A DNA stretch of 64,000 bases, from assembly GCF_006345805.1 (NCBI RefSeq), contig NC_042999.1, positions 138,632,001-138,696,000 of the forward strand. Direction: 5' to 3'. Under the pieces are notes generated by a model, which had not been told where the DNA came from, made no database searches, and worked only from the letters and a program-made list of their open reading frames with translations. Below are positions 21,045 through 58,178 of this stretch, one piece after another (within the stretch, counting starts at the first letter, position 1; each line of letters opens with the position of its first letter). The DNA comes from Octopus sinensis (lineage: Eukaryota). The position numbers and the translations under genes are program-made.

Positions 21045-21129
21045 TAATGGTCATTTTTGCTCAACCGCTAAGTTGCGGGGACGTAAAGACATCAACGAGT
21101 GTCCAGCGGTGGCGGTGTGAGACAAACAT

Positions 21130-21217
21130 AAACACAGACACACACAAACACACACACGCACACACACACATACACACACACACGCACACACACACATACA
21201 CACACACTATATATATA

Positions 21218-21260
<43 letters not shown>

Positions 21261-21356
21261 AATATAAATTAAAAACAGAATACAAAGGATATCGCGGTAC
21301 ACGTGTTTCAAGCTTTATAAACAATCCGTTATTACATCAGTGTATTATTGATATAT

Positions 21357-21430
<74 letters not shown>

Positions 21431-21525
21431 GTATGCATGTATAAATGTATGTATATATATATGTGTATATATATATATGTGTATGTATATATGTATATAT
21501 ATATATATGTAATATGTATGTATAC

Positions 21526-21600
<75 letters not shown>

Positions 21601-21679
21601 GTATATACATTTATGTATGTATATGTATTTATGTATGTATGTATATATACATACATACATATACACACACATACATATA

Positions 21680-21756
<77 letters not shown>

Positions 21757-21792
21757 ATATATATATGTATATATATATATATACACACACAT
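21130..21792. repeat. Compound (CA)n/(TA)n/(TATG)n microsatellite
   Basis: About 660 bp of nearly uninterrupted alternating purine-pyrimidine dinucleotides, broken by a unique insert at ~21260-21350. Explains the YI/HT-repeat ORFs in the ORF track. Confidence 0.95.
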
Positions 21793-22243
21793 CAAAATAA
21801 GCAACATGACATCAAGTAGTGATGCAGTACGACCGTTTCAAGCGACTCCATTTAATTGAACAATGCAATCATTACATCAATTTAAATGCAATGCCATCAT
21901 CAATAGCACAAATAGATAAATAGAATTTTAACTAGTCGGACACATTAAAATAATTTTTCTCAAATATTTTAACAGACCAAGAAGATGGAAGAAAATCTTT
22001 TTGTCACTATTATACCTAAGGATAGACTACACTTCCAAGAATCGCATGAAGCCTATTGGGGTCATAAAATAAAGTTATTAAGGGATTGTAATTCGTGCGA
22101 TTCTTGGAAGTGTAACCGATTATTACCAATTGGTTGATTACCAATGAACAATTAGGGACCTTCTGTGTTTGTCTCCCATCTGGTTGTACACTCAGTATAC
22201 GTTATGTCGTTTGTTTATTTACCATACATTTTTCAATATATAT

Positions 22244-42221: not shown

Positions 42222-42340
42222 TTAGAAATCTGTGCATCCAGAATCTTCAGGTACTTTAGCTTTCTGGATGACTCTCATAGACCGAGATTGGCGTGGTAAA
42301 GACTTTGTTGATCTATCCTCATCTTCACTTGGGTTTTCAC
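42222..42340 (-). CDS. Terminal coding exon (E) of the repeat-motif gene: (S)ENPSEDEDRSTKSLPRQSRSMRVIQKAKVPEDSGCTDF*
   Basis: Acceptor tctctttatatctgctgcAG|GT. Phase 1, 119 nt to TAA (42224-42222). Carries the motif variant QSRSMRVIQ. Confidence 0.8.
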
Positions 42341-43499
42341 CTGCAGCAGATATAAAGAGAAAAACAATCAGAAACATGATTAATCAAAGATTAGCCTTTA
42401 AAGCTCTAATTGTTGAATTACCTTCTACAAGAAAGCCATAGCATCATGACACAAAAATGAAGTTTAAAGTGGTAGTCAGAAAACTTAATTTTAAGACCAT
42501 AGTGAGAAATTTTAGACTAAGTTTCATCATCATCGTTTAACGTCTGCTTTCCACGCTAGCATGGATTGGACGATTTAACTGAGGACTGGTGAACCAGATG
42601 GCTGCATCAAATATATTTTAATGACAAATGTACCAAGTGACCACATTCATCCATATATGCAGTAGTATCTAATTTTTGTTTTTGATCTAAACAAGTCAAT
42701 ATTTTAAGCATCAAAGGGCTTTTAAAGACTAGATTTGGCTCTGCTTTCATGTCATCTAAACCAGGTACTTATGTCATTCTCTTTGATGAGAAACCAATTT
42801 ATTATAGATAATATTCTAGAGATGACATGGATATCTCGAAAGTTGAGCTGGTCCTGCAAAATTAAATGTGTTCCCCAAATACATAAAATGTTTTGGTTGT
42901 CCATTATTAGGCTACACAGTCATTTTTCAACAACAAATGAATCCATGAAAGAGCATGTACATGGCTACTTGTCCTGCTAGAGCCAAATCTCTACCAAATA
43001 AAATTATTGTCTCCCAAAAGGTACATATCTGATATCAGTTCTATAGCTCTAGGAAATAAATAATAAAGAATGGCCATAAAATAACTTCTATTTGATATTC
43101 AGGCTGATCTGGAGCTGAACAACAAAGGGCTTCGAGGTTTGTTTAGACTATCCATGCTTACTATTTTACTGCCTTCTGTGTTGAGGGCACCAACCCTTTG
43201 TGATAGAAGTCCTACATTAAGTTTAAAAGTACTGGTGGGTGGATATTTATTGATAAAAAGGAATGGTAACACACCATAGAACTGATGAGAATTTCATTGC
43301 CTTGTGCTGAATTCAGATATTTGTGTTAAATCTACTTCATTATAAAACTTGTCAAATTACCAATGCCAACTAAAAGATGGAGCAGTTTTGATTTTGTCTA
43401 ATTCTTAAATTAAGCAATGGACAGATTTTTACCAATGAATAATATTTCTAATAGGTCTTATATTTCTATAAACGAATAACTTGTGAAAATGTCATCATT

Positions 43500-43728
43500 C
43501 ATAACGGATACAAGGAGGTACTGCAATGTTTCTGGCTTTAAGGATATTGCAAAAAGCCTGGTTTGAGGCCCAACCTTCTGAGTTCCTTTACAGGGCTTAG
43601 AAAAACCAAAGGACTGCTGCAATAAGTGTGAATCTGAGAGGGAAAAGTGTTGAATAAAATCATAATTAACTGATCCTCCTGTATTTTCTTTTACCCAAAC
43701 CCAGGAACTTTTCAAGACACCCCTCATA
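43500..43728 (-). mobile_element. mariner-family non-autonomous fragment (one TIR)
   Basis: Minus strand tatgaggggtgtcttgaaaagttcc resembles the mariner end at 34916-34940. No second TIR found. Confidence 0.45.
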
Positions 43729-43782
43729 ATTACGGCAATATTAAAAACAGTGTATATCAAATAATAAACTTTAATTACTTAC

Positions 43783-43947
43783 TGCTTGTTGGTTCAATAG
43801 GATCTGATCCTCCAACACTCATTTGTAGTACTTTGAAGACACGTGAAGGGATATGACCACCCGAGTATCGTACCTCTACTGGACCATCACTTTTGTCCTC
43901 ATCCTCCTCTATTGGTGGGCGTTTGGGTTTTGATCTAGATTTCCTCA
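43783..43947 (-). CDS. Coding exon D: (M)RKSRSKPKRPPIEEDEDKSDGPVEVRYSGGHIPSRVFKVLQMSVGGSDPIEPTS
   Basis: tatcttcatttAG| acceptor and |GTAAGT donor. 165 nt, phase 1-1, open frame, contains the motif. Confidence 0.88.
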
Positions 43948-46055
43948 CTAAATGAAGATAACAGAAGGTTTCTAATAAACAAAATGTACAATTTAAAACC
44001 TGATCATAGGTCAACAAACAATACCTATGAATATTCCTTTTTCACTTTCAAATTACTCTTTTCCTTTTATATTTTCTTTCTCTGAAAAACTTTAAAAAAA
44101 AATGTAAAGAAGCAACTTGGGTAAGAATGTACAATCAAGAGAACTTGTAGAAGGAAATAAAATAATTATTGATTATAGTGTGCGTATAAGGGCTCACAAC
44201 ATACTTATTGGTGCAAGATATTAGAGTTATATCAAGAACAAATAAGAACACTGCCAGAAGGCACAGCGATTTCTCATTCCAATAAATTTTATGAAGACAT
44301 CAGAAAAAGATTTAAGAATATCATAAAGAAAAGCAACAAAAATGTAACAAAACCCTTTAAGTTCAAACCCTACAGGATAATTTTTCCTTTGTAGCATCAT
44401 ACCTTCATTTTGTTACTGACATGTTCCACCAAAATGGGGTTTACCAATATTTTGAAGATTCTGAAAACTTATCTGCCATGAGAAGACTAAACCAGAAAAG
44501 ATTTTACTGAAAAAAACCACCATGTTAATTTTCTGCAAATATATAAATACTGAAAGTTGAAACTGTCACATCTCCCATATTTTATTTTTACCATTACTAC
44601 AATGGCTTTGGCTCTTTCAACTAAATGCACTGCCTAGCTTATCAATTGGCCCAAATGTTTCTGAATCCTTGACCAAACATTTTTATCAGTCTTTCCTCAT
44701 CCAAAGTGCATCTGCTTGAAACTTCCTAACCAACTTTTTGCTCAATAAATAATATACCATTATTTAAACTGAACAAAGCACTGATTTAAAACAGAAAATG
44801 AATAATTTAATAATTATATATAACTCCATGCTTGAGTTTTCCCATCCTAAAATTCAAATTTAACAGTAATATATTACCTAAGTCACTTAGATTTGGGTAT
44901 ACATTTTATTATGTACAAATGTTACTCCACCTTCTCAGGCTAATTTTAAAGATGCTTATTACAAGTAGTTTGTATATTACATAACCAACCCCAGATATGT
45001 ATAAAATTGAATATAAATAACTTTTAGTGAATTCAATTACTGAGACAATTCAAACTATTTTATAAAAAGAATTATGGACAGTAGGCTCTAAATCAGTTAT
45101 GGTAATAAAATCTGGCAATATCACAAATATCTGGATTCTTCAGTGTGAAATATTACCAATCACTTATTTAATTTTAATTTGACCAAGTTATTGTTAGTCA
45201 TCGAGAGATTTTAATTGATACCTAAGCAGTCAAGTTCCATCATAATAAAGCTTCTACATGTTTATATTGACTACTAGAAATAGCTGGCAAATCTCCCTCA
45301 AATCAAACTAAAAAGTAGGGATGGATATATTGGATAATGCAGTTTTAAATATGTTATGAGATAGCAATGACACTGATCATAGATCTGTGCAGATAAGGAT
45401 GATCTGTGACTATACTTTAACTAGCTTTTGTCATAAAGAGGTTTGGGCAAGGTTATGAAATGCAGTGCTATTACAGCTTGTGTCACTTAACTATTTCAAG
45501 AAATATCAGTTTTCTTGCAAGAATGATGATAAAGGTTAGCAAACTTAGTTTCACATTCTTTGTTAGAGATTTTCCCCAAACCTCAAAGAATTCCTATTTA
45601 AATGCCTGAACTTTAAATCAGTGTCTAAGTATTGTACATGTTGCAGAAACAAGCAGCAATACCTTTTAGCAAAAAAAAAACTGTTACAGATAATATTTAA
45701 TTATAGCCAGCTATGACTGTCCTTAAAAAGCAAACATTCTTCATATAAATGCCTTGTAGCTGTTACAGATGTGATAGGTTTTAATTTATATTGTCAACTG
45801 CAACCTCATCAATACTATCAGTGAGTGCCAACAATTATGTTGATAGTTACTGACATGTAGTCTCAAGACATTTTAATTTTTCCCCACTTCTAGCATCATC
45901 TAACACATTAGCTTCAGATTTTACCAATACCTTTATTTTTTCTGACTAAAAGCTTTACTGAGGAGTTGATGAAATAGCCTTTTAAGAAATAGCACCTAAA
46001 TCTTTCTAGAATTATGCACCATATCATCTTAAAACAGTGCAGGAGATTAGAAAAT

Positions 46056-46460
46056 TTCTTTATTGCCTACAGGGTGCTAAACATGGAGAGGATAAATAAG
46101 GACAGACAAAGGGATTAAGTCGATTACATCGATCCCAGTGCATAACTGGTACTTAATTTATCGACTCCGAAAGGATGAAAGGCAAAGTCGACCTCGGCGG
46201 AATTTGAACTCAGAACGTAATGGCAGACGAAATACCTATTTCTTTACTACCCACAAGGGACTAAACACAGAGGACAAACAAGGACAGACAAACGGAATAA
46301 GTCGATTATATCGATCCCAGTGCATAACTGGTACTTATTTAATCGACCCCAAAAGGATGAAAGGCAAAGTCGACCTCAGCAGAATTTGAACTCAGAATGT
46401 AATGGCAGATGAAATACTGCTAAGCATTTCGCCCGCATGCTAACGTTTGTACCACCACTC
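46056..46460 (-). mobile_element. Head-to-tail dimer of SINE family A with one 18-bp TSD
   Basis: Two family A bodies, the second lacking its 5' head. TGCAGGAGATTAGAAAAT (46038-46055) versus TGCAGGACATTAGAAAAT (46461-46478). Confidence 0.85.
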
Positions 46461-46599
46461 TGCAGGACATTAGAAAATGAAGACCTAAAAACAATGAGTA
46501 GAAAATTAGGCTAACATATTCAGGCTGATTTGAGGATAAACTAGCCACTTATTTGGATGTACATTCAACTCCATAGCTCCTTATGAAACTGATTTTCAA

Positions 46600-47520
46600 C
46601 TGATCACAAGATTTAGCAAAAATCTCTGATAGACTTGTGAATACCAAGTTAAAACCATAATTATTGAACAAAACAATGAATGAGAAGCACTTGTTACTTT
46701 GAAAATGCTCTCAAACAGAAATACTACAACAGGGTCAGGGGAAAGAAAGGTACCTATGGTTATTTCTATTTCCTTCCTGAATTGAAGGAGGTGCCCCTTC
46801 AGGGCCACTTGCCACAGTTTAATGACAAGAACCAGTAAAAGAATAGAGTCCACACATTGCAAGTTTATAGCATTGTTTAGTATGCTGAGTTAATAGCAGA
46901 ATTTTCAACAGTGGTTGCACAAGTTTTGGATGGAAGACTTGATCCATTGCCCGTTTACCACCACTTAACGCAATGTACAGTTAGAACATTTAAGTGGAGT
47001 TTACTCTGTTGCAAGCATTTGGGTTAGGTTTAAATATAACTTGCACCCTTCCAATAGTCTCAGAGGACCTGAAAAATATAGGCACTGCCCTTCTTCTGGT
47101 TTAGCTATTGAAAAGTCTTAATATATGCAGTCCTGGATTGTGGACTTCCTAAGTATAACAACCATGCAACATTTAGCTTGTTATTGACTATTTGATCAAT
47201 GTTTTCACATTGATCTGAAATTCAATTCCGTTTGTTTTCCCTATTCTTCCATTTATCCTTAAGATACAGCCAGACTTACTTAACAGCAGATTTCCTACTG
47301 CTCTGATATTTTTATTTTATATTTCAACTTTAGGTTATTTTGAGTATCACAAGGATCGATGATATTGTCTATGCCTCATTGCTCAATATGCTGTCTTCTC
47401 TTCTCCAATAATATCTGTAGCTTTCCAAGTTATAAGTGGATTAATATCATCTATCAGTAGGTTGAAAACTACAAACACTACAAATAATGCCTTAAAGCTG
47501 TTGCAAATGTGATTTTTCAT
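46600..47520 (-). mobile_element. Highly degenerate CR1/L2-like LINE RT remnant
   Basis: Faint motifs: VFNLLIDDINP (cf. LFNIFINDL) near 47440-47470 and ETIGRVQ (cf. LERVQ) near 47045-47065. Confidence 0.35.
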
Positions 47521-48016
47521 TTTTTTTTTTAACTTCAGTTAAAACTTCAATAGTCTTGCTTTGAATGCCAACAACAATCATATTGACTTAATTGCTAGCT
47601 TTATGGCTTCAATTTGAAAAGTTTGAAGTGCATCCTGCTGTGATGGATGATGAATAACCTAGTCACAGCAGATGGACAAAAATCATGTTACAAAAAGAAT
47701 CAGGTTAGAAAAAAATTTATAACTTCAGTAAGAAAACACGATCTGTGTGGCACAAATAAGAAACTTGGACTTTCCTAAACGAAGTATTTACATAAAGCTA
47801 CACAAAACTACAACCTAAAACAAAAAATGATATCCACACAGATACACATACACAGATGTATATGTGCATATGCCTTCATGTGTATGTATATAGATATGTG
47901 TGTGCATAGATAAATACAGGTATATCAAATATACACCAATTTATTTATTTTAAATTATCTCTGCTTTTAAAGAATGTGTCATAATTCTTAAATGGCAATT
48001 AAGGCCAACTCCATAA

Positions 48017-48495
48017 GAAAAGAGGAGATAATCTCAAGAATCAATCTCCAATGTTGAAAATCCACAAAGGAAAAGGACAAGTTTGTCGGGAGACAACAAC
48101 TGTGAACATGTTTCTGCTTCTGTAAACATCATCAGCACAACAACTGTGTCCTGCACTAGCTCCAGCAGCATAAAAAAAAAAAAAAAAAAAAAAAAAGAGC
48201 AGTACACATTTACGGCTTATGTTAATATACATAATTTTAAACAAGAATGAGCTAAGAAAAACAACTCAGGATGGCTAGTGCATGTGCTTGAACAATATAG
48301 AGATGTTCTGCTTTTTTTGTATATGTCCACGTCTCTTGGCTATTGGAGAAAAGGTAAGATACTTGTCATACTGATGGTTATTAGGATAGAAAAATAATCA
48401 CAACTGTCCTCTTTTCTCCAGACAATAATCTTGTCTTTTACATTATGGCATGTCAACATTAGAGAATTTGATTCTCAAGATTATCTCCCCTTCTC
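48017..48495. mobile_element. Old MITE-like element with long imperfect TIRs
   Basis: gaaaagaggagataatctcaagaatcaatctccaatgttga (48017-48058) versus the reverse complement of 48452-48495, gagaaggggagataatcttgagaatcaaattctctaatgttgac. Weaker pairing extends ~40 bp inward. Confidence 0.65.
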
Positions 48496-49261
48496 ACAAA
48501 GTACTCATTTTGATTGTCATTTGGCAGTTTCTGTTAGCTCATTTTTAAAGATATATCTGCAATAACGATATATTTTCTTTTAAAAAGACAACTGTAAGCT
48601 TAACAAATTGTACAGCAAATGACATCTGCAGTCAAACTATTTTATGTGACTGCAAAAACACACACACACACAACTACTTTACATAGACTATTCGGATCTA
48701 GCTAATTCCTCACATACATTACAGTTAACTGGTCAAAAATAGAAAGAATATCCATTTGCAAAAGCAACTCATCCAACAATATGCAAATTGTTCAAATAAT
48801 CATTCTTTTATGAAAAATGATCTCTCACATATACAAGACAGTTTGAAAACTAAAAAGATTAGAAATGTAAAAATACATATCTAAGCCATCTTAAATGGAG
48901 ATGCACTTCAATTCTTCATAAAAAAATGTTATAGATTGGTTTCTGATCGGAACTAGCTGGTAAAAACAGAATTAATAATAGTTATTTATAACTAATCCAT
49001 GTGTAACATTAGTTACATACTAAACTATAATCTGTCATTAACAAAATGTTACTAGGTAGAAATTAACAAAGGTAAAATGACTAGTTCCTGACTATTTTGC
49101 TCTTGTTGGTTTAAGAACTTGGGCAGTACTTATAATATGAATTTCACATCAAGACTAGACATGTTTTAAACAACATTTGAAATTCTGACACAAACGATTT
49201 TTACACATGAAAGTCTAAGATAATAAACTTATTGCTTGAGGAAAGGCAAGCATTACAGGGG

Positions 49262-49490
49262 CGGGGGTCATATTTAAGATGGTAAGCTGGCAAAAATCAT
49301 TAGCATGCTGGACAGAATGCTTAAAAGCATTTTGTCTGTCTTTACATTCTGAGTTCAAATTCTACTTAGGCCAACTTTGCTTTTCATTCTTTTGAGGTTG
49401 ATAAATTAAGTACCGGTTGAGCATGGGGTTAGTGTAAGCAACTCCCTTCTACATAATTTCAAGCCTTGTGCCTGCAGTAAGAAGGATTAA
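49262..49490 (+). mobile_element. SINE family A, decayed
   Basis: taagctggcaaaaatcattagcatgctgg...gagttcaaattctacttaggccaactttgcttttcattc matches family A. Confidence 0.7.
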
Positions 49491-50042
49491 GATTTTGGGT
49501 GCAAAACGTCAAAGAAGTAAATATAATAAACTGCTACCATAACTTTGCTTATGCTACATTGCTGAGTAGACAATTCATTGCCCAGTTTATCTCTTACAAC
49601 CTGGTCTTGAGGACTAACAAACTCCTCTTTGTTGCAAGCATTTAGGCCAAATACTTGATCTATAGATCATTTGCTCCCTTCCTTCCACTAATCTCAGAAC
49701 CCTTGTAAAGTATCACTGGTGTTGCTCTTCCTCTTCTAATTAAACCATAAAAAGCAAAGAACTGGTTTTAAGGTGGTAACGAGGGGAAAGGGAAATCAAG
49801 ACGGGACTGGCATCATATTACTAAAAGGTCCAATTCCTAATCCTGACAGAAAGGTGGAGTAAGATGTATAGAATTAAAAGTACTTTTCTCAGAATAAAAT
49901 CATACGCACGTGTGTACAGAATGGAAATATTCAACATCTCAGAGAGAAAGAGTGACAGAAAGAGAGAGATTCAGATTCTTTGAAATTCATCAATACTGTG
50001 GTGTTAGAATATTGCATATTGTTCAACAGTTGCATCACTTAC

Positions 50043-50186
50043 TTTTAGGACTAGGGAGTACATCTTTGTCAGCCCAAGCTTTCAATACCTGGAATGTTGG
50101 GGATGGAATGCATTTGCCTGTATAGCGGATTGAAGTATTCATAACAGAGTTGCCTACAGTTTCTTCTTCAGTATCCAAGCCAGAAT
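50043..50186 (-). CDS. Coding exon C: (D)SGLDTEEETVGNSVMNTSIRYTGKCIPSPTFQVLKAWADKDVLPSPK
   Basis: ataccatttAG| acceptor and |GTAAGT donor. 144 nt, phase 1-1, open frame, contains the motif. Too short for the ORF track. Confidence 0.88.
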
Positions 50187-53100
50187 CTAAATGGTATTTT
50201 GATCAATTAATTATAAAAAAAATTAACTAACTTTTTTTTTACTCGATTTCTTTAGTACAAAACTGAGTTGTTGATTGGTTAGAATCAGTTCACTTTGTCT
50301 AACGAAGTTTGATAAGTTGAAAGTTACATTATTGAGATTTAGTATTTTTGTGTTATAGAAGTAATAGAGTAAAGAGGTTTCAAATTCTAGGAAATCTTGA
50401 GAGAATGTTGAGAAAATACTTCTCAACAGTTTTAGCAATCATTGTTATTGATAAAAATAAGTTTGTGGCATTCAGAAATGGAACACTGATTAATAAACAA
50501 CTTTCATGCATTGGTAAAAACATTTTATAAGCGTTTCCATGAACATAAATTATATACACATACATATGTATATACATGTATGTTTGCATGGATGATGAGA
50601 GTGTATTTGTGAGTATATAATTTGTTGGTTAACTGAAGATTGAGTGGTTTACATTCTAAATTTGAAAAATAAACTTAAATATGATCAAACACAGACTATC
50701 ATCATCATTGTTTAACGTCTGCTTTCCATGCTAGCATGGGTTGGACGATTTGACTGAGGTCTGGCAAACCAGATGGCTGCACCAGACTGATCTGATCTGA
50801 ATGAGATTAGTCATATAGAGTGATCATTATTAAAAATATTTTCCCATTAATTATTGGCTAGTCACAGTCCAAAAAGGAAAAGTGAATGAAACAGATTTCT
50901 TATTGTACACATGTTAGAAATAAGTGTGGTTAGTTGCAGATGGGTATAGAGTATAAGAGGCATAAACATGATGTAAAATATCCTTCATCTGCCTACTGTG
51001 TGAAATCAATAAGCAATAAAAGATTGAATCATATTATGAAATAGATCAATAATTGAGCAGACTTATAATTAAATGCGCTCCATCAGTCATCACCTCACTT
51101 GTTTAGCTAAGAATGTCCAATGTTATTTCTCTAAGATAAGGTGTAAATGGAAAAAATTGGTTGTTATTTCTAGCAGCTTGAGCGACCACATAGGGGATCC
51201 TTTGGTCTGATGAGAGCTTTGTTTTTTTTTAGTTTGTGGTATTGATTACTTTGTCACAAATGCCATTATTCAACCCTCTGGCTAATGGTGTGAATCAGCA
51301 ATTGAGAACAACGTAGAAATTTTCCCAATTTGGAATTTAAGTTCTTTTAAGCATGACTAAACATTGTATAGGTAAGCTATGGCTAGAGACGTTCACTTTG
51401 CAATAATGTTAACAGTCTGTTCCTACTGCATGGTACCTTGGGCAAGTATCTTTTGCTATAACCTTGGGATGACTTGTGTCATGGGAATAAAATTTAGTAG
51501 ATGGAAACTGCAGAAGCCCAACATCTATGTGCATGTACACAATATGCACATTATGCAACTCTGTTTAAAAATTAATTTGATGAAGAAATATCATTAAAAT
51601 AATTATCAGACTGAAATAAGCACAAGTTAATAATGATTAAAATGCTTGAAAGTGGTACTTAAGCATGGCTGCAGGTAAGGACTGAAAACAGAAAAGACTA
51701 TATATGGATTTAAATAACAGGAATGTAAAACTAATAAATCTCAACAAAATACCTTATCAATAAAAGCAAAATCCACTCTGCAATATTCCAGGCAAGTAAA
51801 AGGACATTAAGTAAAAATCAATAAGTGTTCTTTAAAAGAAGATGCTTCTTTTGGATAAGGTGCTATCTATTGTCTGATGGTCAACTAACTCTTCCCAATA
51901 GCTTGGATGAATTCAAGTATTGACCCCAAATGCAAGGGAATGCCAGCAACAAATTTTGAATTACTACTACCAGCTAGTAGCCCAATATCATGACTTGACT
52001 ATTGTAACTACTTTAGCATTTTACATCTGTTTATTTTTTAGTCAATATACAACTGAAAAATACTGTCTGCAATAAAAGAAATGCAATAAATAAATAGTCA
52101 CATAAGCTGGAAATAAGCTAGCAGTTTCCAAATTCAGTTCGTCAAATTTCGTTCCTGAATTCAAGAAATTAAATAATACTTTTAGTTCACTTCAAATATA
52201 TTTTCCCCTGGTGGATCTACTCTTTCAAATTGTGGCAATCTTTCAAAAGCTGAGTTTAAGAAATCTGTTCTTTACATAATTTTGAGGAAACCAGTATACA
52301 AAATACTGAAATTTCATGAAGCTTCAGGTTTAACCGATTTTCAACTCAAGATTTCAAACGAAACAATGACATCAAGTATTACTGATGAGTTATCTTTGTT
52401 GAGTTAATAGAATCTGTCACACCATTATTCAGAAATTCTGTACTATCTAAGTGGTTATTTAATAAGTTTGTCATCATTACATAAGTATTTTAATATATAT
52501 ATATATTCATGAAATGCAAGTTTATTGAATACATCATACTTAATCATTTTTGTCTCTAAAATAATGTTATTAATATTTATAAACTTTTCGAAAAAAAAAT
52601 TCTGACAATGATGGAACAAAACTATATGAGAATAGCCAATAATTCAATATACTCAATACAAATTTGAATTTTTCTGAATTACATTTTTAATTTTAGTTAA
52701 AACCCTGTCAAATGTCTTCATTCCATAGATTGCCACCAAAAGATCTTGTGTTAACTTTCATATTCTTCCACCATCAAACTTTAAATGCCAATTCTTAATT
52801 GAACTAGATCATCTATTTTATTCCTGATTATTTCAGTTGTGATATGTTGTACAAATTAGGGCTTCTAAATACCTGTTTGTTTGAAGGTCCAGGTGTTTGT
52901 GTGAAAAATTAAAGTGACTTGCATGTAAGACCCCTCATTAGCTTATATTGTTTCACATTCCAATAACAAATTTCAAAATACTGGATATTGGAATTTCTCC
53001 TGGAAATTTTTATAACCATTGGAAACATTTCAAACCCCTTGACAATAAATCACCTGTTTCTGGTTATTAGTCAAATACTTTCAGAAGCTATTGATAAAAA

Positions 53101-54841
53101 ACATACTGTACATAATGCATTGTAAATCCTTCCACCACATATTTATTTAGAGATGAGCATGCAAGTACACACACTCGTTCACAGATATGAAACAGTGCAT
53201 GCAAATTGGTACAACTCCTCCTGTTACACAAATTTCGTTACAGTAGATTAATGATTTGTTGGTTATTTTATTAGTATTGAACAAATACATTAAAACTTGT
53301 AAACATTAAAAATAACATATTTCCATTTTTTGACAATTGTAGAATCCTGATCATTTTGTCCAGTTCATGGAAACAATTTTGATAAAAACAATTAACATAA
53401 AAACAACAGCAACAACAATTTTTAAAATGGAAAATTTTGTTTTTTCTTCCATAAAAACATTAACAATAGTCAAACAGTTTCAACATGGTTACAGATATGG
53501 TTTGCCAAGATTTTATCTTTGTGCTATCTTGCTTTGAACAAGAGGAATCACCAAATGCTCCTCAACAGGGTCACTTGGCTTGCTAAAAATAGCAGCCAAA
53601 TCTCGCTCAAATTACTGTCAGAGACAAGCACATAACCTAATGTAATTAAAAATACATGAGAATGGCAATAGTTATAGCTGAATGCCTTAATTCATAGGCC
53701 TGTTCATTTAAGGATAAGCTGTGGCTAAACAACATCAGTAGTTTAATTGCTAAAAATTTTAATGTAAATTATTTTAGATTTTACAAGCACCAATTTGAAA
53801 CAGGAAAGAGGCTCACTGAAAAAAAAAGCTTGAACCATGTAACTATCACTATTATTTCTTGGGGCAAACATTGAATCAATATAGGATACATTACTAGAGT
53901 AGCTTATCCAGCTAATAGCAAGTGCTTGATGAATTATTCAATTAGAACTGCAAGATCAATTGATACCTAATTTGAAAAGAAATGACAAGTGGTCTGTCAT
54001 GTAATTAGTATCAGTCATCTGGTGAGTAATCGGAGATGCATAAAGACTAGAATTCCCTCTCTGAATGTTGTGGCTTTATTACTTTTTGTCTTAAATTGAT
54101 CTAATTTTAAAAAATTAGCAGGGTCAGGATACAAATGATTGAATTAACTTTCCTCCAAATAAAGAGGATTCTAGCAAGATCTGAACTCAGACAAGTAGAA
54201 GAGTGGAACTAAATAGTTCCATTTTTAGCTTAATACATTTTTGCTCAAGGTGCAGTCAATTATATTAGTTTTATTTTTATTGACCTCAGTGCGATTTGAA
54301 CTCAGAATAGAAAGGGACATAACCAAATACTACAAAGAAATTAATCCAACAGTCTGCTGAATCTGGTACACCAGAATCCAAATACTATCCTAAGTTTATT
54401 ACATTGTAAGGGACTTAGTTTAGATGCCATTTACTACAACGCCAGTCTCATAATACAGCTTTAGCAAGCTACATGGCAGTTTACTTTACTCAACTAAGAA
54501 AATAAAAATATCATTGCTTGATTGGAGAATAGTTGGCAATAATTAAGAAAATCTTTCTAGGAAATAGCTATCCAAATAATTTATGTGTTGAGATATGATT
54601 GTGGGGAAAACAAGGCTTTTAGCCAAATTTCATCATAAAAAAGTGAATCAGTTGTAAAATATTCTCAGATATTGCACAGAGTAAATAGTGGACCATTATT
54701 AAAACTATTTCTCCTCAATTTTAACTTTGAAAGTTAAGACTATAGGTGCGATTGATATTTTTGCTTTACCCCAAGGTATACCTAAAAATATCAGTTGAGT
54801 TTACTTCTTATTGTCAATAGTTAACAAGTATAAACACTTAC

Positions 54842-54955
54842 CTGGAGTTGGGTCAGTGTCTGTATCTGCCCAGTTCTGCAAGACACGGAAAGATGGTGAT
54901 GGAATGTGCTTTCCTTTATATCGGATCGATGCTTCACAATAATTACCAACACCAT
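54842..54955 (-). CDS. Coding exon B: (D)GVGNYCEASIRYKGKHIPSPSFRVLQNWADTDTDPTP
   Basis: Long poly-T tract then cttctctcatttcAG| acceptor, and |GTAAGT donor. 114 nt, phase 1-1, contains the motif. Confidence 0.9.
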
Positions 54956-54971
54956 CTGAAATGAGAGAAGA

Positions 54972-55007
<36 letters not shown>

Positions 55008-55225
55008 TATAATTCCCAGAATTATAATTTTTCAACTAGATAGATACAATACATAAATTCAAAAGGTTCTAAGATAAAATTAATATAAATTAATAAAAAG
55101 GATCAATAAAAATATTATAAGAGGTAATACTTTCAACAAATATCACCTACAAAAAGAATGTGATTGTCAATATATTATGACAGTTTAAGGCTGTTCAAAT
55201 ATCAGTAAAACCAGACCTATGGATA

Positions 55226-55953
55226 GTTAGTTAGTTAATTTGGCTCAAAAGCAAATAGCAAGGCCATGTAGGGGGACATGGAGTTAAGTACAGGGTGGTG
55301 TTCATGTAAAGAGTTCAGGCCACTTGAGGTCCAGGGAGGCTTTGAACAAAGCGGTCGTCGGCATCTTCACCATCTCGTCTGGCAGCTTGTTCCACGGATC
55401 CGCAACCCGGACGGAGAAAGCTCCTCTCCTTCGATTGAGATGAAATCGTCGCAGGTAGAGCTTTTCGGAATGACCCTGCAGCCGACGCTCTGGAGCAGGA
55501 GTGAAGAACAGCTCTTTCGAGATGTTACACTTTCCGCTTATGATGTTGTGGGCGAGAATGAGATCACCACGGCGGCGGCGTTTTTCAAGAGAATAAAGGT
55601 CGAGCGTCCTCAGCCTTTCTTCGTAGGACAAATTTTTGAGACCATGAACCATGCGGGTAGCCAGCTTCTGGACTCTTTCGAGATGCTGTATGTCTTTGAG
55701 GAGATAAGGAGAAGAGGCTTGAATCCCATACTCCAATATGGGTCTCACCAGCGTGACAGAGTGGTAGGAATATGGCTGCTGTGAGCATTCCGAATGACCG
55801 TCGAATCAAGAACAGAATTCCGCGTGCTTTGTTGGCAGCATGGACGCACTGGGCCGAAGGCGAAAAGGAGGAATCCACCAAGATACTCAGGTCCTTTACC
55901 TGATCGGTCCTCTCCAGCAGCAGACGACCCGGCTCGAAATCAAGTGAGTTGCA
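55226..55953 (-). mobile_element. 5'-truncated CR1-clade LINE (RT thumb/C-terminus plus short 3'UTR with (TAAC)n tail)
   Basis: RPILEYGIQASSPYLLKDIQHLERVQKLATRMV..LSYEERL..L.LYSLEKRRRRGDLI..RLQGHS.KL...FSVRVADPWNKLP. One frameshift near 55750. GC-rich relative to flanks. Possible 5-bp TSD GGATA at 55221-55225 and 55954-55958. Confidence 0.92.
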
Positions 55954-58001
55954 GGATAAATACATATATTTATTCATTCTATGAAAGCATTAAACAAATG
56001 CTAGTTCCAGTGGAGCAGCATTTTTGAAATGGAATGGAATGTAAATTGCTCTACTAAGCTTTGTTTAAAGCACAGTCCTTGTGGCCAAATTCTCTGCAAA
56101 AGTTTTAAATCTCAGGCTACATTAAGTTGAAGCCATTCTGCTATTAACTTGAATTGTAACACTAAATTTCTGATGGGACAACCACAGCAACAAAAGTCTT
56201 AGAACATTTTGTGAATCCAGAAGCTATGTGCATTACAAGCATTACATGCTTTCACAGTTATAACTTATGAAATTACATAAAATTAGAATTTATTGTATTC
56301 TCTCCCTCCCTCCATCTCATCCAATGTGTCCTTCCTTTTTTTAAACTGGATGATGTTATTTGAAGGAGATTTGAGTGCTGTTTCTAGAAGGTTGAGCCCT
56401 TACACAAAGGCTCCAATGTTGGCCCAGTCATATGTATATATAAAAAAGTTGTTTGTATATTTGTCAATGAGGTGATGGTGACTGTTGCAAATACAGCATA
56501 TGTGGTGAATGCAGGGTTGTAGTGGCACTATGTAGTGGAACTGAACTATTAGTAGGCATAGGTTATTATCAAATCATCTAATTTACTTTCTTTTCATTTC
56601 TTCCTATGATTGTCATGTGTCAGATATATGAATGTCAGCAGAAAATAACCAAGAGACATTTGTTGAAATTCTCACATTGTTTATTCCTCATATCAACTGA
56701 TCCATCTATTCTACTATCAAACAGTTCTGCTGTCATCATTATCCAGTCTTGTTCAAAATTTAAGTGAGAGTATATCATCCAATGTGTCTTTCCTTTATGG
56801 TAGTGAAGTGAAATTTCAAATATTTGGCTTTGATTTCTAACCATTTGATTGATTTCACAGAAGCTCCCTCATGGTTTGTAGTTAAAGACATTGATATGAT
56901 CAATGCAAAACTGTTTTTTTCATCATTCTTATCTATATCCAAGTATGATGGTCAGCTAAGATCAAACCAGCTCTCCTCAAGCCTGCTTTTGCCTCCTCGC
57001 CTAACCCTTTACCACTTAAAAGAATTTTATTCCATTACCTGGCCTTACAAGTGTAGGTTTTTTGGTTTTTGTGAAAGACTTTGACACATAGTTGCAGCTT
57101 AATTTATCATGGCTAAGATAAATTTCCAGACTAGTAATCTTATATTTAGAATTTATATTTACAATATATCTAAACCGGATTTTAATTGACCTGATTTCTG
57201 TTATCAAGTTTTACTTTCTGCATGATCCCAGACTGGATTAGAACTTTCTCCATATCTACGGTCAATCTGGTCTTTCTACTTCATTAATGTCAACCTCTAT
57301 ATAAATTAGTGAAAAGGTCGTTAATCAATATTTCTAGATTACAAGAGTGGTAGATATGCAAGTGATTATGTGAATGGATACTACAGTGTAAATGTGAGCA
57401 AACGTGTGAATGAGCAAATATAAATGTACATAGGAATTTTTGTGCGAAGGGACATAACTCTTTTCTATTCCTAAACTAAAGTTACAAGTCGATTTGATTC
57501 CATAATCCCAATACCAATTTAGCTGCAAATGATCAGTTGTCCGACGACAGCTTTAAAGAAAGAAAAGGAGATTAACACCACCATGTGGTACCAGGGGTCA
57601 TTATCAAACTTTCATTCTCTCCTTCTGCATTCTTTCCTGCCAATGTCAGGCTGGGCAGTTTGCAACATTAATCCCACCAGCCAATGGTGATCTGCCCTAT
57701 CCCTCTTTACCTGATTAATTTAAAAGAAATGGAAATTATTTGCTTTGTGCAGTTAAAAAGTCATTAAAAAATGCAATTTATTCGAAATTATTTTAATCTG
57801 TTCTTATCTCAGAATCAACAAATTGTAGGCAAGCCAATGAGGCAAGATTGATCCTCCAATCTACTAGAAATAGCAACTAATTCTCCCTCAAACTCTTACT
57901 AAAGAATAGAGCATAATGTGGTCTGAGATAAAAGGAAAAGATGATGATCAAGATGAGAATGGGCTGAGGTAGGGAAAAAAAAAAATGTAGTTAACACTAA
58001 C

Positions 58002-58178
58002 CTTCATCTTGAGTGTCTTGTGATGAGACTTCATCTTGACTATCTGATACAGTTAAATTCTGCAACATTTTAAAAGACTTGGACGGAATATCACGCTTAC
58101 TATGGAGACCAGAGAATCTCATTTCATCATCTTCAGAGTTGTGACGCAGTAGTGGGTTCTTCTGTTTCTTACGAGACA
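58002..58178 (-). CDS. Coding exon A: xSRKKQKNPLLRHNSEDDEMRFSGLHSKRDIPSKSFKMLQNLTVSDSQDEVSSQDTQDE
   Basis: ataccattttcttTAG| acceptor and G|GTTAGT donor. 177 nt, phase 1-1, contains the motif with a 4-aa insertion. Confidence 0.85.

What the first reader, a model, noticed from the sequence alone, without database searches (positions are those of the whole stretch)
42222..58178. Unrecognised gene built as one short linear motif per symmetric phase-1 exon
Seen: five GT-AG exons of 177, 114, 144, 165 and 119 nt splice in frame into ~239 aa. The four internal exons are multiples of 3 with phase 1 at both ends. Each exon carries one motif copy in an acidic or Pro-rich disordered linker: MRFSGLHSKRDIPSKSFKMLQ, IRYKGKHIPSPSFRVLQ, IRYTGKCIPSPTFQVLK, VRYSGGHIPSRVFKVLQ and LPRQSRSMRVIQ. 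Recalled knowledge: the S-x-S-F-R-x-L-Q core resembles the QSxSFRxL box of ALP/Enigma PDZ-LIM proteins (PDLIM/ZASP, DUF4749 region), which act at actin/alpha-actinin structures. Inference: a multivalent cytoskeletal or muscle scaffold whose number of binding motifs could be tuned by skipping any internal exon without frameshift. I do not recognise the gene, and its 5' exons probably lie beyond 64000.
Basis: partly seen in the sequence, partly recalled or inferred. Interest (0 to 1): 0.78.

Follow-up and report, generated by a model that had tools for sequence, protein, structure and literature searches.

The report
Octopus Zasp-like gene's repeat-motif tail exons
The five exons are real. They are the 3' half of an already-predicted octopus "Zasp-like motif" gene, a LIM-less relative of the PDZ-LIM (ZASP/Enigma) muscle scaffold proteins. 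Its disordered tail repeats the old, still unexplained ZASP/Enigma box, one copy per exon, a layout shared by molluscs and arthropods.

Summary
Observation confirmed. Five minus-strand exons (177, 114, 144, 165 and 119 nt) have AG/GT borders, all in phase 1, and each carries one RYxGxHIPSxxFxVLQ-type motif.

The gene is not unrecognised. Its product matches exon for exon the Octopus bimaculoides UniProt entry A0A0L8GUQ2, "Zasp-like motif domain-containing protein", 474 aa.

- **Upstream exons.** Exons beyond the window encode a true ZM/DUF4749 domain. PDZ exons lie further upstream on the same strand.
- **No LIM exon.** None was found at the locus. A separate PDZ-ZM-LIM gene sits on another contig.
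- **Splicing evidence.** A processed pseudogene elsewhere in this genome holds exon 1 fused to exon 2. O. bimaculoides isoforms with and without exon 3 show it is a cassette, and it is an octopus-lineage copy of exon 2.
- **Conservation.** The other repeats are individually conserved across molluscs. The one-motif-per-phase-1-exon layout recurs in oyster, horseshoe crab and aphid.
- **The motif.** It is a multiplied version of the 15-residue ZASP/Enigma box noted in 1999.

The function is inferred: a disordered, multivalent, LIM-less Z-line adaptor. Its conserved C-terminal T-D-F may dock in a PDZ domain, but the modelling support is weak. I file it as a new member of a known kind, of moderate interest, because the protostome-wide family is essentially unstudied.

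The parts
58002..58178 (-). Exon e1, 177 nt, phase 1-1. Repeat 1: DDEMRFSGLH...IPSKSFKMLQ.
   Evidence: AG/GT borders. 100% identical over 59 aa to O. bimaculoides P0164. Joined to e2 in retrocopy L003. The DDEMRFSGL...IPSK core is conserved across molluscs and Lingula. AF2 predicts a helix at the SKSFKMLQ core.
54842..54955 (-). Exon e2, 114 nt, phase 1-1. Repeat 2: VGNYCEASIRYKGKHIPSPSFRVLQNWAD.
   Evidence: AG/GT borders. Its first 35 nt follow e1 directly in retrocopy L003. It is the most conserved repeat in molluscs. The Pinctada orthologous exon has the same phase.
50043..50186 (-). Exon e3, 144 nt, phase 1-1. A cassette exon and a lineage-specific duplicate of e2 (IRYTGKCIPSPTFQVLKAWAD).
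   Evidence: AG/GT borders. About 70% nt identity to the e2 core. Absent from O. bimaculoides isoforms P0165 and P0166 and from another cephalopod transcript, P0167; the junction residue V is as predicted for e2-e4 splicing. No second IPSP[ST]F copy occurs outside Octopus among the retrieved relatives.
43783..43947 (-). Exon e4, 165 nt, phase 1-1. Last full repeat: VEVRYSGGHIPSRVFKVLQ.
   Evidence: AG/GT borders. RY.GG.IPS..F..LQ is invariant in a 14-sequence mollusc/brachiopod alignment. The Pinctada orthologous exon has the same phase. AF2 predicts a helix at RVFKVLQ.
42222..42340 (-). Terminal coding exon e5, 119 nt including TAA. Degenerate box (QSRSMRVIQ) and conserved C-terminus ...CTDF.
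   Evidence: AG acceptor and stop codon. The C-terminal [ST][DE]F is conserved in molluscs and in many arthropod members, where the last residue varies (F, Y, L or M). The Pinctada terminal exon enters in phase 1 too. PDZ-tail model: weak support.

Best explanation
**Shown**
- The five exons are the 3' coding half of the octopus member of a protostome-wide, LIM-less branch of the Zasp/ALP-Enigma (ZM/DUF4749) proteins.
- A short isoform starts at an internal first exon about 47 kb upstream of e1. It runs through a ZM-motif exon, a 42-nt exon and the exon holding the classical DUF4749 box, then e1-e5, and ends at TAA (474 aa in O. bimaculoides).
- The tail is predicted disordered. It carries four full copies and one degenerate copy of an extended version of that box (RYxGxxIPSxSFxxLQ), one per phase-1 exon.
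- This exon layout is shared with a bivalve, a horseshoe crab and an aphid, so it is ancestral to the family.
- e3 is a later duplicate of e2 and a true cassette exon.

**Inferred**
- PDZ exons further upstream on the same strand probably give a long PDZ-ZM-repeat isoform, as in other molluscs.
- The protein is a muscle Z-line or dense-body adaptor. Its ZM motif and repeated boxes make several weak contacts with the alpha-actinin/actin/PDZ-LIM network.
- Having no LIM domains, it would act like the fly "blocking" Zasp isoforms, which join the lattice but cannot recruit further molecules.
- The conserved C-terminal T-D-F may occupy an ALP/Enigma-type PDZ pocket.
- Including e3 changes the number of boxes from four to five.
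For: **Exon anatomy**
- Borders, phases and motifs read directly.

**Identity**
- P0001 is UniRef A0A0L8GUQ2, O. bimaculoides "Zasp-like motif domain-containing protein". It matches the exons in order, with the predicted junction residues.
- DUF4749 scores 65.7 bits on P0001. In this genome the ZM exon scores 28.8 bits and the box exon 24.8 bits.

**Splicing**
- Retrocopy L003 joins the upstream exons A, B, C and D, e1 and the start of e2 without introns.
- Isoforms with and without e3, and with and without a 20-aa exon, exist in O. bimaculoides.

**Family**
- A profile of the repeats finds 250 proteins at E<=1e-3 and 77 at E<=1e-10. They come from molluscs, a brachiopod, chelicerates, crustaceans and insects.
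- Most carry 3-6 copies, many have an N-terminal PDZ, and none of those scanned has a LIM domain.
- Phase-1 motif exons occur in Pinctada, Tachypleus and Cinara.

**This locus**
- PDZ exons lie upstream on the same strand. A conserved intermediate exon ends in the phase that fits the ZM exon.
- No LIM exon was found from 60 kb below the window to 120 kb above it, or among genome-wide LIM hits on this contig. A PDZ-ZM-LIM gene lies on contig C7.

**Structure and binding**
- AF2 mean pLDDT is 50.7, with helices only at two box cores.
- PDZ plus C-terminal tail of the Pinctada orthologue: score 0.37, best of 3 controls 0.02. The tool rates this as weak support.

**Literature**
- The box QSRSFRILAQMTGTE was noted in ZASP, ENH and Enigma (PMC3206570).
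- ZM binds LIM domains, and LIM-less isoforms block Z-disc growth (PMC6910826).
- Mussel PDCP-1 (PDZ+ZM) is muscle-enriched and binds actin (PMC7573561).
Against: - No expression data for this genome were available. The long PDZ isoform rests on homology and collinearity only.
- No partner of the repeated box is known in any species. The single octopus repeat exons get no Pfam hit. Isolated arthropod repeats hit DUF4749 positions about 60-88 only below threshold (12.7-18.1 bits).
- No Drosophila member appeared, and no hit carried a Zasp66 or Zasp67 name. The "blocking isoform" analogy is therefore by architecture, not by orthology.
- The PDZ-tail model is only a weak pass. It is of a kind (a disordered peptide) that the test was not calibrated on, and it may reflect memory of solved PDZ-peptide complexes.
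- Octopus muscle is obliquely striated, so fly Z-disc rules may not transfer.
Confidence: 0.7

Rival explanations
1. One reading: a previously unrecognised gene in which any internal exon can be skipped freely to set the number of equivalent binding motifs.
For: All internal exons are phase 1-1 and multiples of 3. One of them, e3, is skipped in public isoforms.
Against: - The gene model is in UniProt.
- e1, e2 and e4 are present in all five cephalopod sequences.
- Each has its own conserved flanks across molluscs: DDEMRFSGL, VGNY.E.SIRYKGK, LPDTL...RYKGG. This argues for position-specific roles rather than interchangeable units.
Confidence: 0.1
2. The repeated boxes are mainly regulatory sites. 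They would be serine phospho-acceptors in basic or hydrophobic contexts, read by kinases or phospho-binding proteins, rather than direct cytoskeletal binding modules.
For: - The invariant P-S and a frequent second serine lie next to R/K and F in every copy.
- The tail is disordered.
- The vertebrate DUF4749 region is known to be phosphorylated (PMC11312917 for Y251).
Against: - No kinase motif was tested here.
- I could not place the published PDLIM5 Ser177 site in the box from the text available.
- The strictly conserved hydrophobic F-x-x-L-Q face and its helical propensity fit a docking helix at least as well.
- The two readings are not exclusive.
Confidence: 0.2
3. The exons are an alternative 3' end of a canonical PDZ-LIM gene whose LIM exons lie further downstream than I looked.
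For: Fly Zasp52 and vertebrate ZASP have LIM-less alternative ends (PMC6910826, PMC3206570). I scanned only 60 kb beyond e5 by pattern and tblastn.
Against: - The stop and the T-D-F end are conserved as the true C-terminus in molluscs, a brachiopod and arthropods.
- None of the relatives scanned has a LIM domain.
- None of the 94 reported genome-wide LIM hits falls on contig C3.
- A separate ZM exon with a LIM exon next to it sits on C7.
Confidence: 0.05
4. The protein works outside the cell as a matrix or biomineralisation factor, as proposed for the mussel PDZ-ZM protein PDCP-1.
For: PDCP-1 was recovered from shell myostracum and alters calcite growth in vitro (PMC7573561). It is probably in the same family, since its listed BLAST relatives include "extensin-like" proteins, as does our Lingula hit.
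Against: - The short isoform's N-terminal exon shows no obvious hydrophobic signal peptide by eye; no predictor was run.
- Octopuses lack a mineralised shell.
- PDCP-1 itself is most expressed in muscle and binds actin (PMC7573561).
- The family also occurs in insects and ticks.
Confidence: 0.05

Closest known systems
Octopus bimaculoides 'Zasp-like motif domain-containing protein' (UniRef A0A0L8GUQ2 and three isoform entries; P0001, P0164-P0166)
   Same: Same gene in a sister species. The exon order and junction residues are identical, e1 is 100% identical, and the end is ...CTDF.
   Different: There are small substitutions, and the Gln-rich stretch in the ZM exon differs, so the window comes from another Octopus species or a divergent haplotype. 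The entries are automatic predictions without functional study.
Vertebrate ZASP/LDB3, ENH/PDLIM5 and Enigma/PDLIM7: the internal box QSRSFRILAQMTGTE (C-terminal part of Pfam DUF4749)
   Same: The core S-x-S-F-[RK]-x-L-Q followed by an M/I-T-acidic stretch is the same. The octopus gene carries one canonical copy inside a true DUF4749 domain, and the tail repeats are variations of it (PMC3206570).
   Different: Vertebrate proteins have one copy and end in one or three LIM domains. Here there are five or six copies, an added RYxGxxIP prefix, no LIM domain, and a T-D-F end.
Drosophila LIM-less 'blocking' Zasp isoforms (Zasp52-PP, Zasp66, Zasp67, ZM-only Zasp66-PH)
   Same: The architecture is ZM without LIM, and the octopus short isoform also lacks PDZ, like Zasp66-PH. 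The fly proteins join the Z-disc through ZM-LIM binding and stop its growth (PMC6910826).
   Different: No orthology was shown. No Drosophila protein, and no hit named Zasp66 or Zasp67, appeared in two searches seeded with insect members. I could not check whether the fly proteins carry the repeated box.
Mytilus coruscus PDCP-1 (PDZ-domain-containing protein 1, AKS48171.1)
   Same: It is a mollusc PDZ + ZM protein without LIM, about 78% disordered and Gln-rich. It is most expressed in adductor, foot and mantle, and binds actin at sub-micromolar KD (PMC7573561). The domain plan matches the Mytilus and Pinctada members found here.
   Different: I could not fetch its sequence, so membership is probable but not tested. 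The paper stresses a shell-matrix role and does not describe the repeated box.

Membership tests
Pfam DUF4749 / ZM-motif proteins | ZM motif (..QYNSP.GLYS..) matching the N-terminal part of the DUF4749 model | tested here: met
   The upstream exon B (L006 6149-5793) scores 28.8 bits against a cut-off of 28.7, on model positions 2-30. The orthologous whole protein P0001 scores 65.7 bits over positions 2-88.
Pfam DUF4749 / ZM-motif proteins | C-terminal box (SEVYK..., QS.SF..LQ..T.TE) matching model positions about 49-89 | tested here: met
   Exon D (L005 7390-7164) scores 24.8 bits, E 3.9e-5, on positions 49-89. It lies within the single 65.7-bit domain of P0001.
Pfam DUF4749 / ZM-motif proteins | The five tail repeats (e1-e5) themselves match the DUF4749 box | tested here: inconclusive
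   - The single octopus exons give no hit.
- Six of nine isolated arthropod-type repeats give DUF4749 positions about 60-88 as a Pfam hit (the only hit for five of them), but at 12.7-18.1 bits, below the cut-off.
- A profile built from the repeats plus the box retrieves both kinds of copy in relatives.
ALP/Enigma (PDZ-LIM) family | N-terminal PDZ domain | tested here: inconclusive
   Two PDZ-coding exons, 58-62% identical to the Pinctada orthologue, lie upstream on the same strand and in the right order (C3:138943944-138944054 and 138865606-138865764). No transcript evidence links them to these exons. The documented isoforms start without a PDZ domain.
ALP/Enigma (PDZ-LIM) family | One or more C-terminal LIM domains | tested here: not met
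   - e5 ends in a stop that is conserved as the C-terminus.
- No LIM pattern or tblastn hit was found from -60 kb to +184 kb in window coordinates.
- No LIM domain is seen in any relative scanned.
- No genome-wide LIM hit falls near this locus.
Protostome LIM-less PDZ-ZM-box-repeat family (unnamed; probably includes mussel PDCP-1) | Ordered repeats: box, then DDEMRFSGL...IPSK.F, then IRY.GK.IPSPSF..LQ, then RY.GG.IPS..F..LQ, then a C-terminal [ST][DE]F | tested here: met
   All elements are present in order in the window and aligned with 13 relatives.
Protostome LIM-less PDZ-ZM-box-repeat family (unnamed; probably includes mussel PDCP-1) | One motif per exon, with phase-1 borders | tested here: met
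   Seen in the window, in Pinctada L022, and in Tachypleus L023 and Cinara L024.
Drosophila Zasp66/Zasp67 (blocking Zasp paralogues) | Sequence orthology to Zasp66 or Zasp67 | tested here: not met
   Word-index searches seeded with an aphid member and a mosquito member returned 74 and 80 relatives. None was from Drosophila or named Zasp66 or Zasp67. The length limits of that tool mean short fly isoforms could have been missed.

The most novel reading that the evidence does not exclude
The RYxGxxIPSxSFxxLQ unit may be an autonomous, still undescribed docking motif. It would be the same one that occurs once in human ZASP, ENH and Enigma. The protostome-wide LIM-less family that multiplies it 3-6 times, ending in a PDZ-ligand-like tail, would then be an unstudied class of Z-line regulators. 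Finding its partner in octopus or mussel muscle would also explain the function of the conserved box in the human cardiomyopathy gene LDB3.
Probability: 0.4. Interest if true: 0.6.

Novelty: new member of a known kind. Interest (0 to 1): 0.4.

Why it matters
The gene itself is ordinary in that it is already predicted and belongs to a known superfamily. Following it up showed three things that the literature I could search does not describe.

- The 15-residue ZASP/Enigma box, unexplained since 1999, exists as a tandem array in a LIM-less family found in molluscs, a brachiopod, chelicerates, crustaceans and insects.
- Nearly every member of that family is labelled "uncharacterized" or carries a misleading automatic name such as trichohyalin-like, extensin-like or WAS-interacting.
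- The one-box-per-phase-1-exon layout is ancestral, and the octopus lineage has used it to add a copy that is optionally spliced.

A motif that evolution multiplies is likely to be a binding unit in its own right. This gives a practical handle, in the form of peptide arrays and pull-downs, on a conserved part of human disease genes (LDB3, PDLIM5) whose role is unknown.

Tried and rejected
- **Pfam on the exons one by one.** No meaningful hit. One sub-threshold Enolase_C match came from a wrong frame that I had entered by mistake.
- **Simple LIM and PDZ patterns.** Over 244 kb they returned only low-complexity noise. The PDZ exons were found only with a relative's PDZ as query.
- **The look-up of encoding contigs.** It failed for non-longest isoforms. 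The longest products worked.
- **Bacterial promoter/terminator scan.** Run downstream of the stop, it is meaningless for a eukaryotic gene. Poly(A) hexamers are listed, but the real 3' end is unknown.
- **AMPK site idea.** I considered that the box holds the AMPK site Ser177 of PDLIM5. The paper's text does not give the local sequence and says the site is conserved only in mammals, so I dropped it.
- **Search for a characterised fly orthologue.** None was found.
- **Te Velthuis "ALP-like motif".** I checked whether it is the same box. That paper describes it as specific to the ALP subfamily and 34 aa long, so I do not equate them.
- **The joined spliced model.** It was deliberately not built or searched. 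Joins were checked by phase arithmetic, by the public protein and by the retrocopy.
- **Human-contig rule.** The contig is cephalopod, not human, so the rule did not apply.

Full report
**1.

Reading the minus strand at the five sites gives these exons:

| Exon | Coordinates | Length |
|---|---|---|
| e1 | 58178-58002 | 177 nt |
| e2 | 54955-54842 | 114 nt |
| e3 | 50186-50043 | 144 nt |
| e4 | 43947-43783 | 165 nt |
| e5 | 42340-42222 | 119 nt, ends in TAA |

- Each acceptor is a pyrimidine tract plus AG. Each donor is GTAAGT or GTTAGT.
- Every border is phase 1, and the split codons read D, D, M and S.
- A loose motif pattern applied to all six frames of the window hits only these five places.
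The joins rest on phase arithmetic and on the two independent lines of evidence below.

**2. Where the window comes from**

- The window is G000:C3:138632001-138696000 of a 2.72-Gb assembly.
- Its closest protein match is from Octopus bimaculoides, but with small differences.
- It is therefore an Octopus genome and not human, so the rule about human contigs does not apply.

**3. A processed pseudogene in the same genome proves part of the splicing**

- Exon e1 recurs at 99% identity on contig C17, with a duplicate on unplaced contig C10262.
- There it is followed directly by the first 35 nt of e2, with no intron.
- Upstream of e1 the copy continues, again without introns, into sequence that maps back to four more exons on C3 beyond the window:
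  - Exon A (L008 1521-1185): 5' leader and ATG.
  - Exon B (L006 6149-5793).
  - Exon C (L006 3981-3940).
  - Exon D (L005 7390-7164).
- All four have proper splice sites and compatible phases.
- The copy has an in-frame stop and a deletion, so it is a dead retrocopy. It records five real splice junctions of the parent mRNA.

**4. The upstream exons identify the gene**

- Exon B encodes GQYNSPLGLYS, the ZASP-like (ZM) motif. It reaches the Pfam DUF4749 threshold (28.8 bits, model positions 2-30).
- Exon D encodes SEVFKLINE...KQSLSFKVLQWMTDTE and matches DUF4749 positions 49-89 (24.8 bits, E 3.9e-5).

**5. The gene is already in public databases**

- A profile of the five exons plus the exon-D box (alignment A3) was searched against 1.84 billion representative proteins. 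It gave 250 hits at E<=1e-3 and 77 at E<=1e-10.
- The top hit, P0001 (333 bits, six matched stretches), is UniRef A0A0L8GUQ2, "Zasp-like motif domain-containing protein", O. bimaculoides, 474 aa.
- It consists of exons A-D and e1-e5 in order, with exactly the predicted junction residues, and it ends in ...CTDF.
- Pfam gives it one DUF4749 domain (65.7 bits) and nothing else.

**6. Alternative splicing**

Four O. bimaculoides entries differ in two ways:

- **Presence or absence of e3.** The 48 residues drop out cleanly. The new junction codon V is what e2 plus e4 would give.
- **Presence or absence of a 20-aa exon between exon D and e1.** I found this exon in this genome at L005 2804-2745. It is 60 nt, phase 1-1, and has no motif.

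A transcript-derived protein from another cephalopod (P0167) also lacks e3.

- e3 resembles e2 far more than any other repeat, with about 70% nt identity in the core and shared IPSP and WAD.
- Only Octopus has a second copy of that type among all retrieved relatives.
- e3 is therefore a lineage-specific exon duplicate used as a cassette.
- By contrast, e1, e2 and e4 are in every cephalopod sequence. Each has its own conserved flanks across molluscs and Lingula.

**7. The family**

- **Taxa.** Named members come from gastropods, bivalves, a brachiopod, horseshoe crabs, ticks, crabs and many insect orders.
- **Names.** Almost all are "uncharacterized" or carry misleading automatic names.
- **Typical plan**:
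  - an N-terminal PDZ domain in many models;
  - a long low-complexity linker;
  - ZM/DUF4749;
  - the canonical box (QSRSFRVLQKITDTD in arthropods);
  - three or more repeats of RYxGxxIPSRSFRxLQxMT;
  - in many members a C-terminal [ST][DE][FYLM].
- **No LIM.** None of the 25 relatives scanned with Pfam has a LIM domain.
- **No fly member.** No Drosophila protein appeared in two follow-up searches seeded with insect members.

**8. The exon design is ancestral**

- In the pearl oyster gene (L022), repeats 1, 2 and 3 and the terminal segment each occupy one exon, with phase-1 borders.
- The same holds for motif exons in the horseshoe crab (L023) and an aphid (L024).
- Symmetric phase-1 exons are what one expects if the array grew by exon duplication. 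They allowed the octopus lineage to add e3 without disturbing the frame.

**9. The rest of the locus**

- With the oyster PDZ as query, two PDZ-coding exons appear on C3, on the same strand, upstream and in the right order.
- A further conserved exon (L009 4827-4652) matches the mid-part of the PDZ-bearing mollusc proteins. It ends in the phase that fits exon B.
- A long PDZ-ZM-repeat isoform from a distal promoter is therefore likely, giving a gene span of about 270 kb. This is inference.
- LIM exons were not found within 60 kb downstream or 120 kb upstream. No genome-wide LIM hit lies on this part of C3.
- On contig C7 a ZM exon, PDZ-like exons and a LIM exon cluster together. That is presumably the canonical PDZ-LIM gene.

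**10. What the motif is**

- Faulkner et al. (PMC3206570) noted a conserved 15-residue stretch, QSRSFRILAQMTGTE, shared by ZASP, ENH and Enigma. No function has been assigned to it.
- The tail repeats share its S-F-[RK]-x-L-Q core and, in arthropods, the following M-T-G/D.
- Isolated arthropod repeats pick out DUF4749 positions about 60-88 as their top Pfam hit, but only below threshold.
- AF2 on the tail with a 14-sequence alignment gives mean pLDDT 50.7 and pTM 0.15. The only helices are at SKSFKMLQNLTV and RVFKVLQMSV. The picture is short helix-prone motifs in disorder.

**11. How it probably works (inferred)**

- In flies the ZM motif binds LIM domains. LIM-less isoforms, including a ZM-only one, join the Z-disc and terminate its growth (PMC6910826).
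- The ALP internal region binds the alpha-actinin rod (PMC2670261, abstract).
- The mussel PDZ-ZM protein PDCP-1 is muscle-enriched and binds actin (PMC7573561).
- By architecture, the octopus protein should be a LIM-less adaptor at Z-lines or dense bodies, with several weak docking sites.
- The conserved T-D-F end looks like a class I PDZ ligand. From my own recollection, not checked here, it resembles the alpha-actinin tail that ALP/Enigma PDZ domains bind.
- I tested the oyster PDZ (P0013 residues 1-95) against its own last 40 residues:
  - Score 0.37, best of 3 controls 0.02.
  - The runs agree in at least 88% of contacts, and the partner pLDDT is at least 52.
  - The tool rates this as weak support. 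The mark was reached by 51 of 78 solved complexes and 2 of 108 mismatched pairs. Scores of 0.60 or under were seen for only 5 of those 78 solved complexes and for all 4 mismatches that passed.
  - Peptides and disordered chains were not part of the calibration, and PDZ-peptide complexes are common among solved structures.
  - I treat this as a hint only.

**12. Verdict**

The claim of an unrecognised gene is wrong. Free cassette tuning is only partly supported.
- Identity of the locus: about 0.95. The proposed mechanism: about 0.45.
- This is a new member of a known kind. It gains some interest because the wider family and its multiplied box are unstudied.

Noticed in passing
L003 1466-2622 (G000:C17, about 13614138-13615294), duplicate on L002 (C10262); further fragment at G000:C2:138506736-138506860: This is a processed, intron-less partial copy of the gene's mRNA: exon A leader through the first 35 nt of e2, 92-100% identical per segment. 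It has an in-frame stop and a 14-nt deletion. Unusually for a retrocopy it keeps the 5' end and is cut at the 3' end, where unrelated sequence follows.
   Followed up: partly
window 630-2966 (-): A 778-aa ORF with an AP-endonuclease domain followed by a reverse transcriptase. It is a non-LTR (LINE) retrotransposon copy, and the RT part is truncated.
   Followed up: partly
window 55278-55977, both strands (intron between e1 and e2): Overlapping ORFs of 130-168 aa without a Pfam hit. A near-identical peptide recurs at window-extended coordinate about 160404. This is probably a dispersed repeat fragment.
   Followed up: no
window 21047-21859: A long TA/CA-rich microsatellite block that produces spurious ORFs of up to 270 aa on both strands.
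   Followed up: no
G000:C7:90471445-90617633 and C7:90965835-90965939: A ZM exon (33 bits), a LIM exon 11 kb downstream of it and weak PDZ-like exons upstream, all on the minus strand. This is presumably the canonical octopus PDZ-ZM-LIM (ALP/Enigma) gene. A second, better-scoring ZM exon lies 0.5 Mb away.
   Followed up: partly
G000:C8851:101975-103461 (-): A complete PDZ match without introns, followed within 1.5 kb by three LIM matches. This is a compact, possibly retroposed, Enigma-type PDZ-LIM gene on an unplaced contig.
   Followed up: no
L009 4652-4827 (-), equal to window-extended coordinates 118652-118827: A conserved upstream exon encoding ...LLNTMLKNKDQKPFAYIPSGIDLKELAEKRK. It is shared with oyster, mussel and sea-slug relatives (KPFSYG.DL.ELKKK), has no Pfam match, and its role is unknown.
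   Followed up: partly
window 54855-54872 and 50062-50079 (-): Directly after the box in e2 and e3 comes a Trp-acidic stretch (NWADTDTD, AWADKD), conserved as TWAE.DP in gastropods. From memory it resembles kinesin light-chain W-acidic motifs. This was not tested.
   Followed up: no
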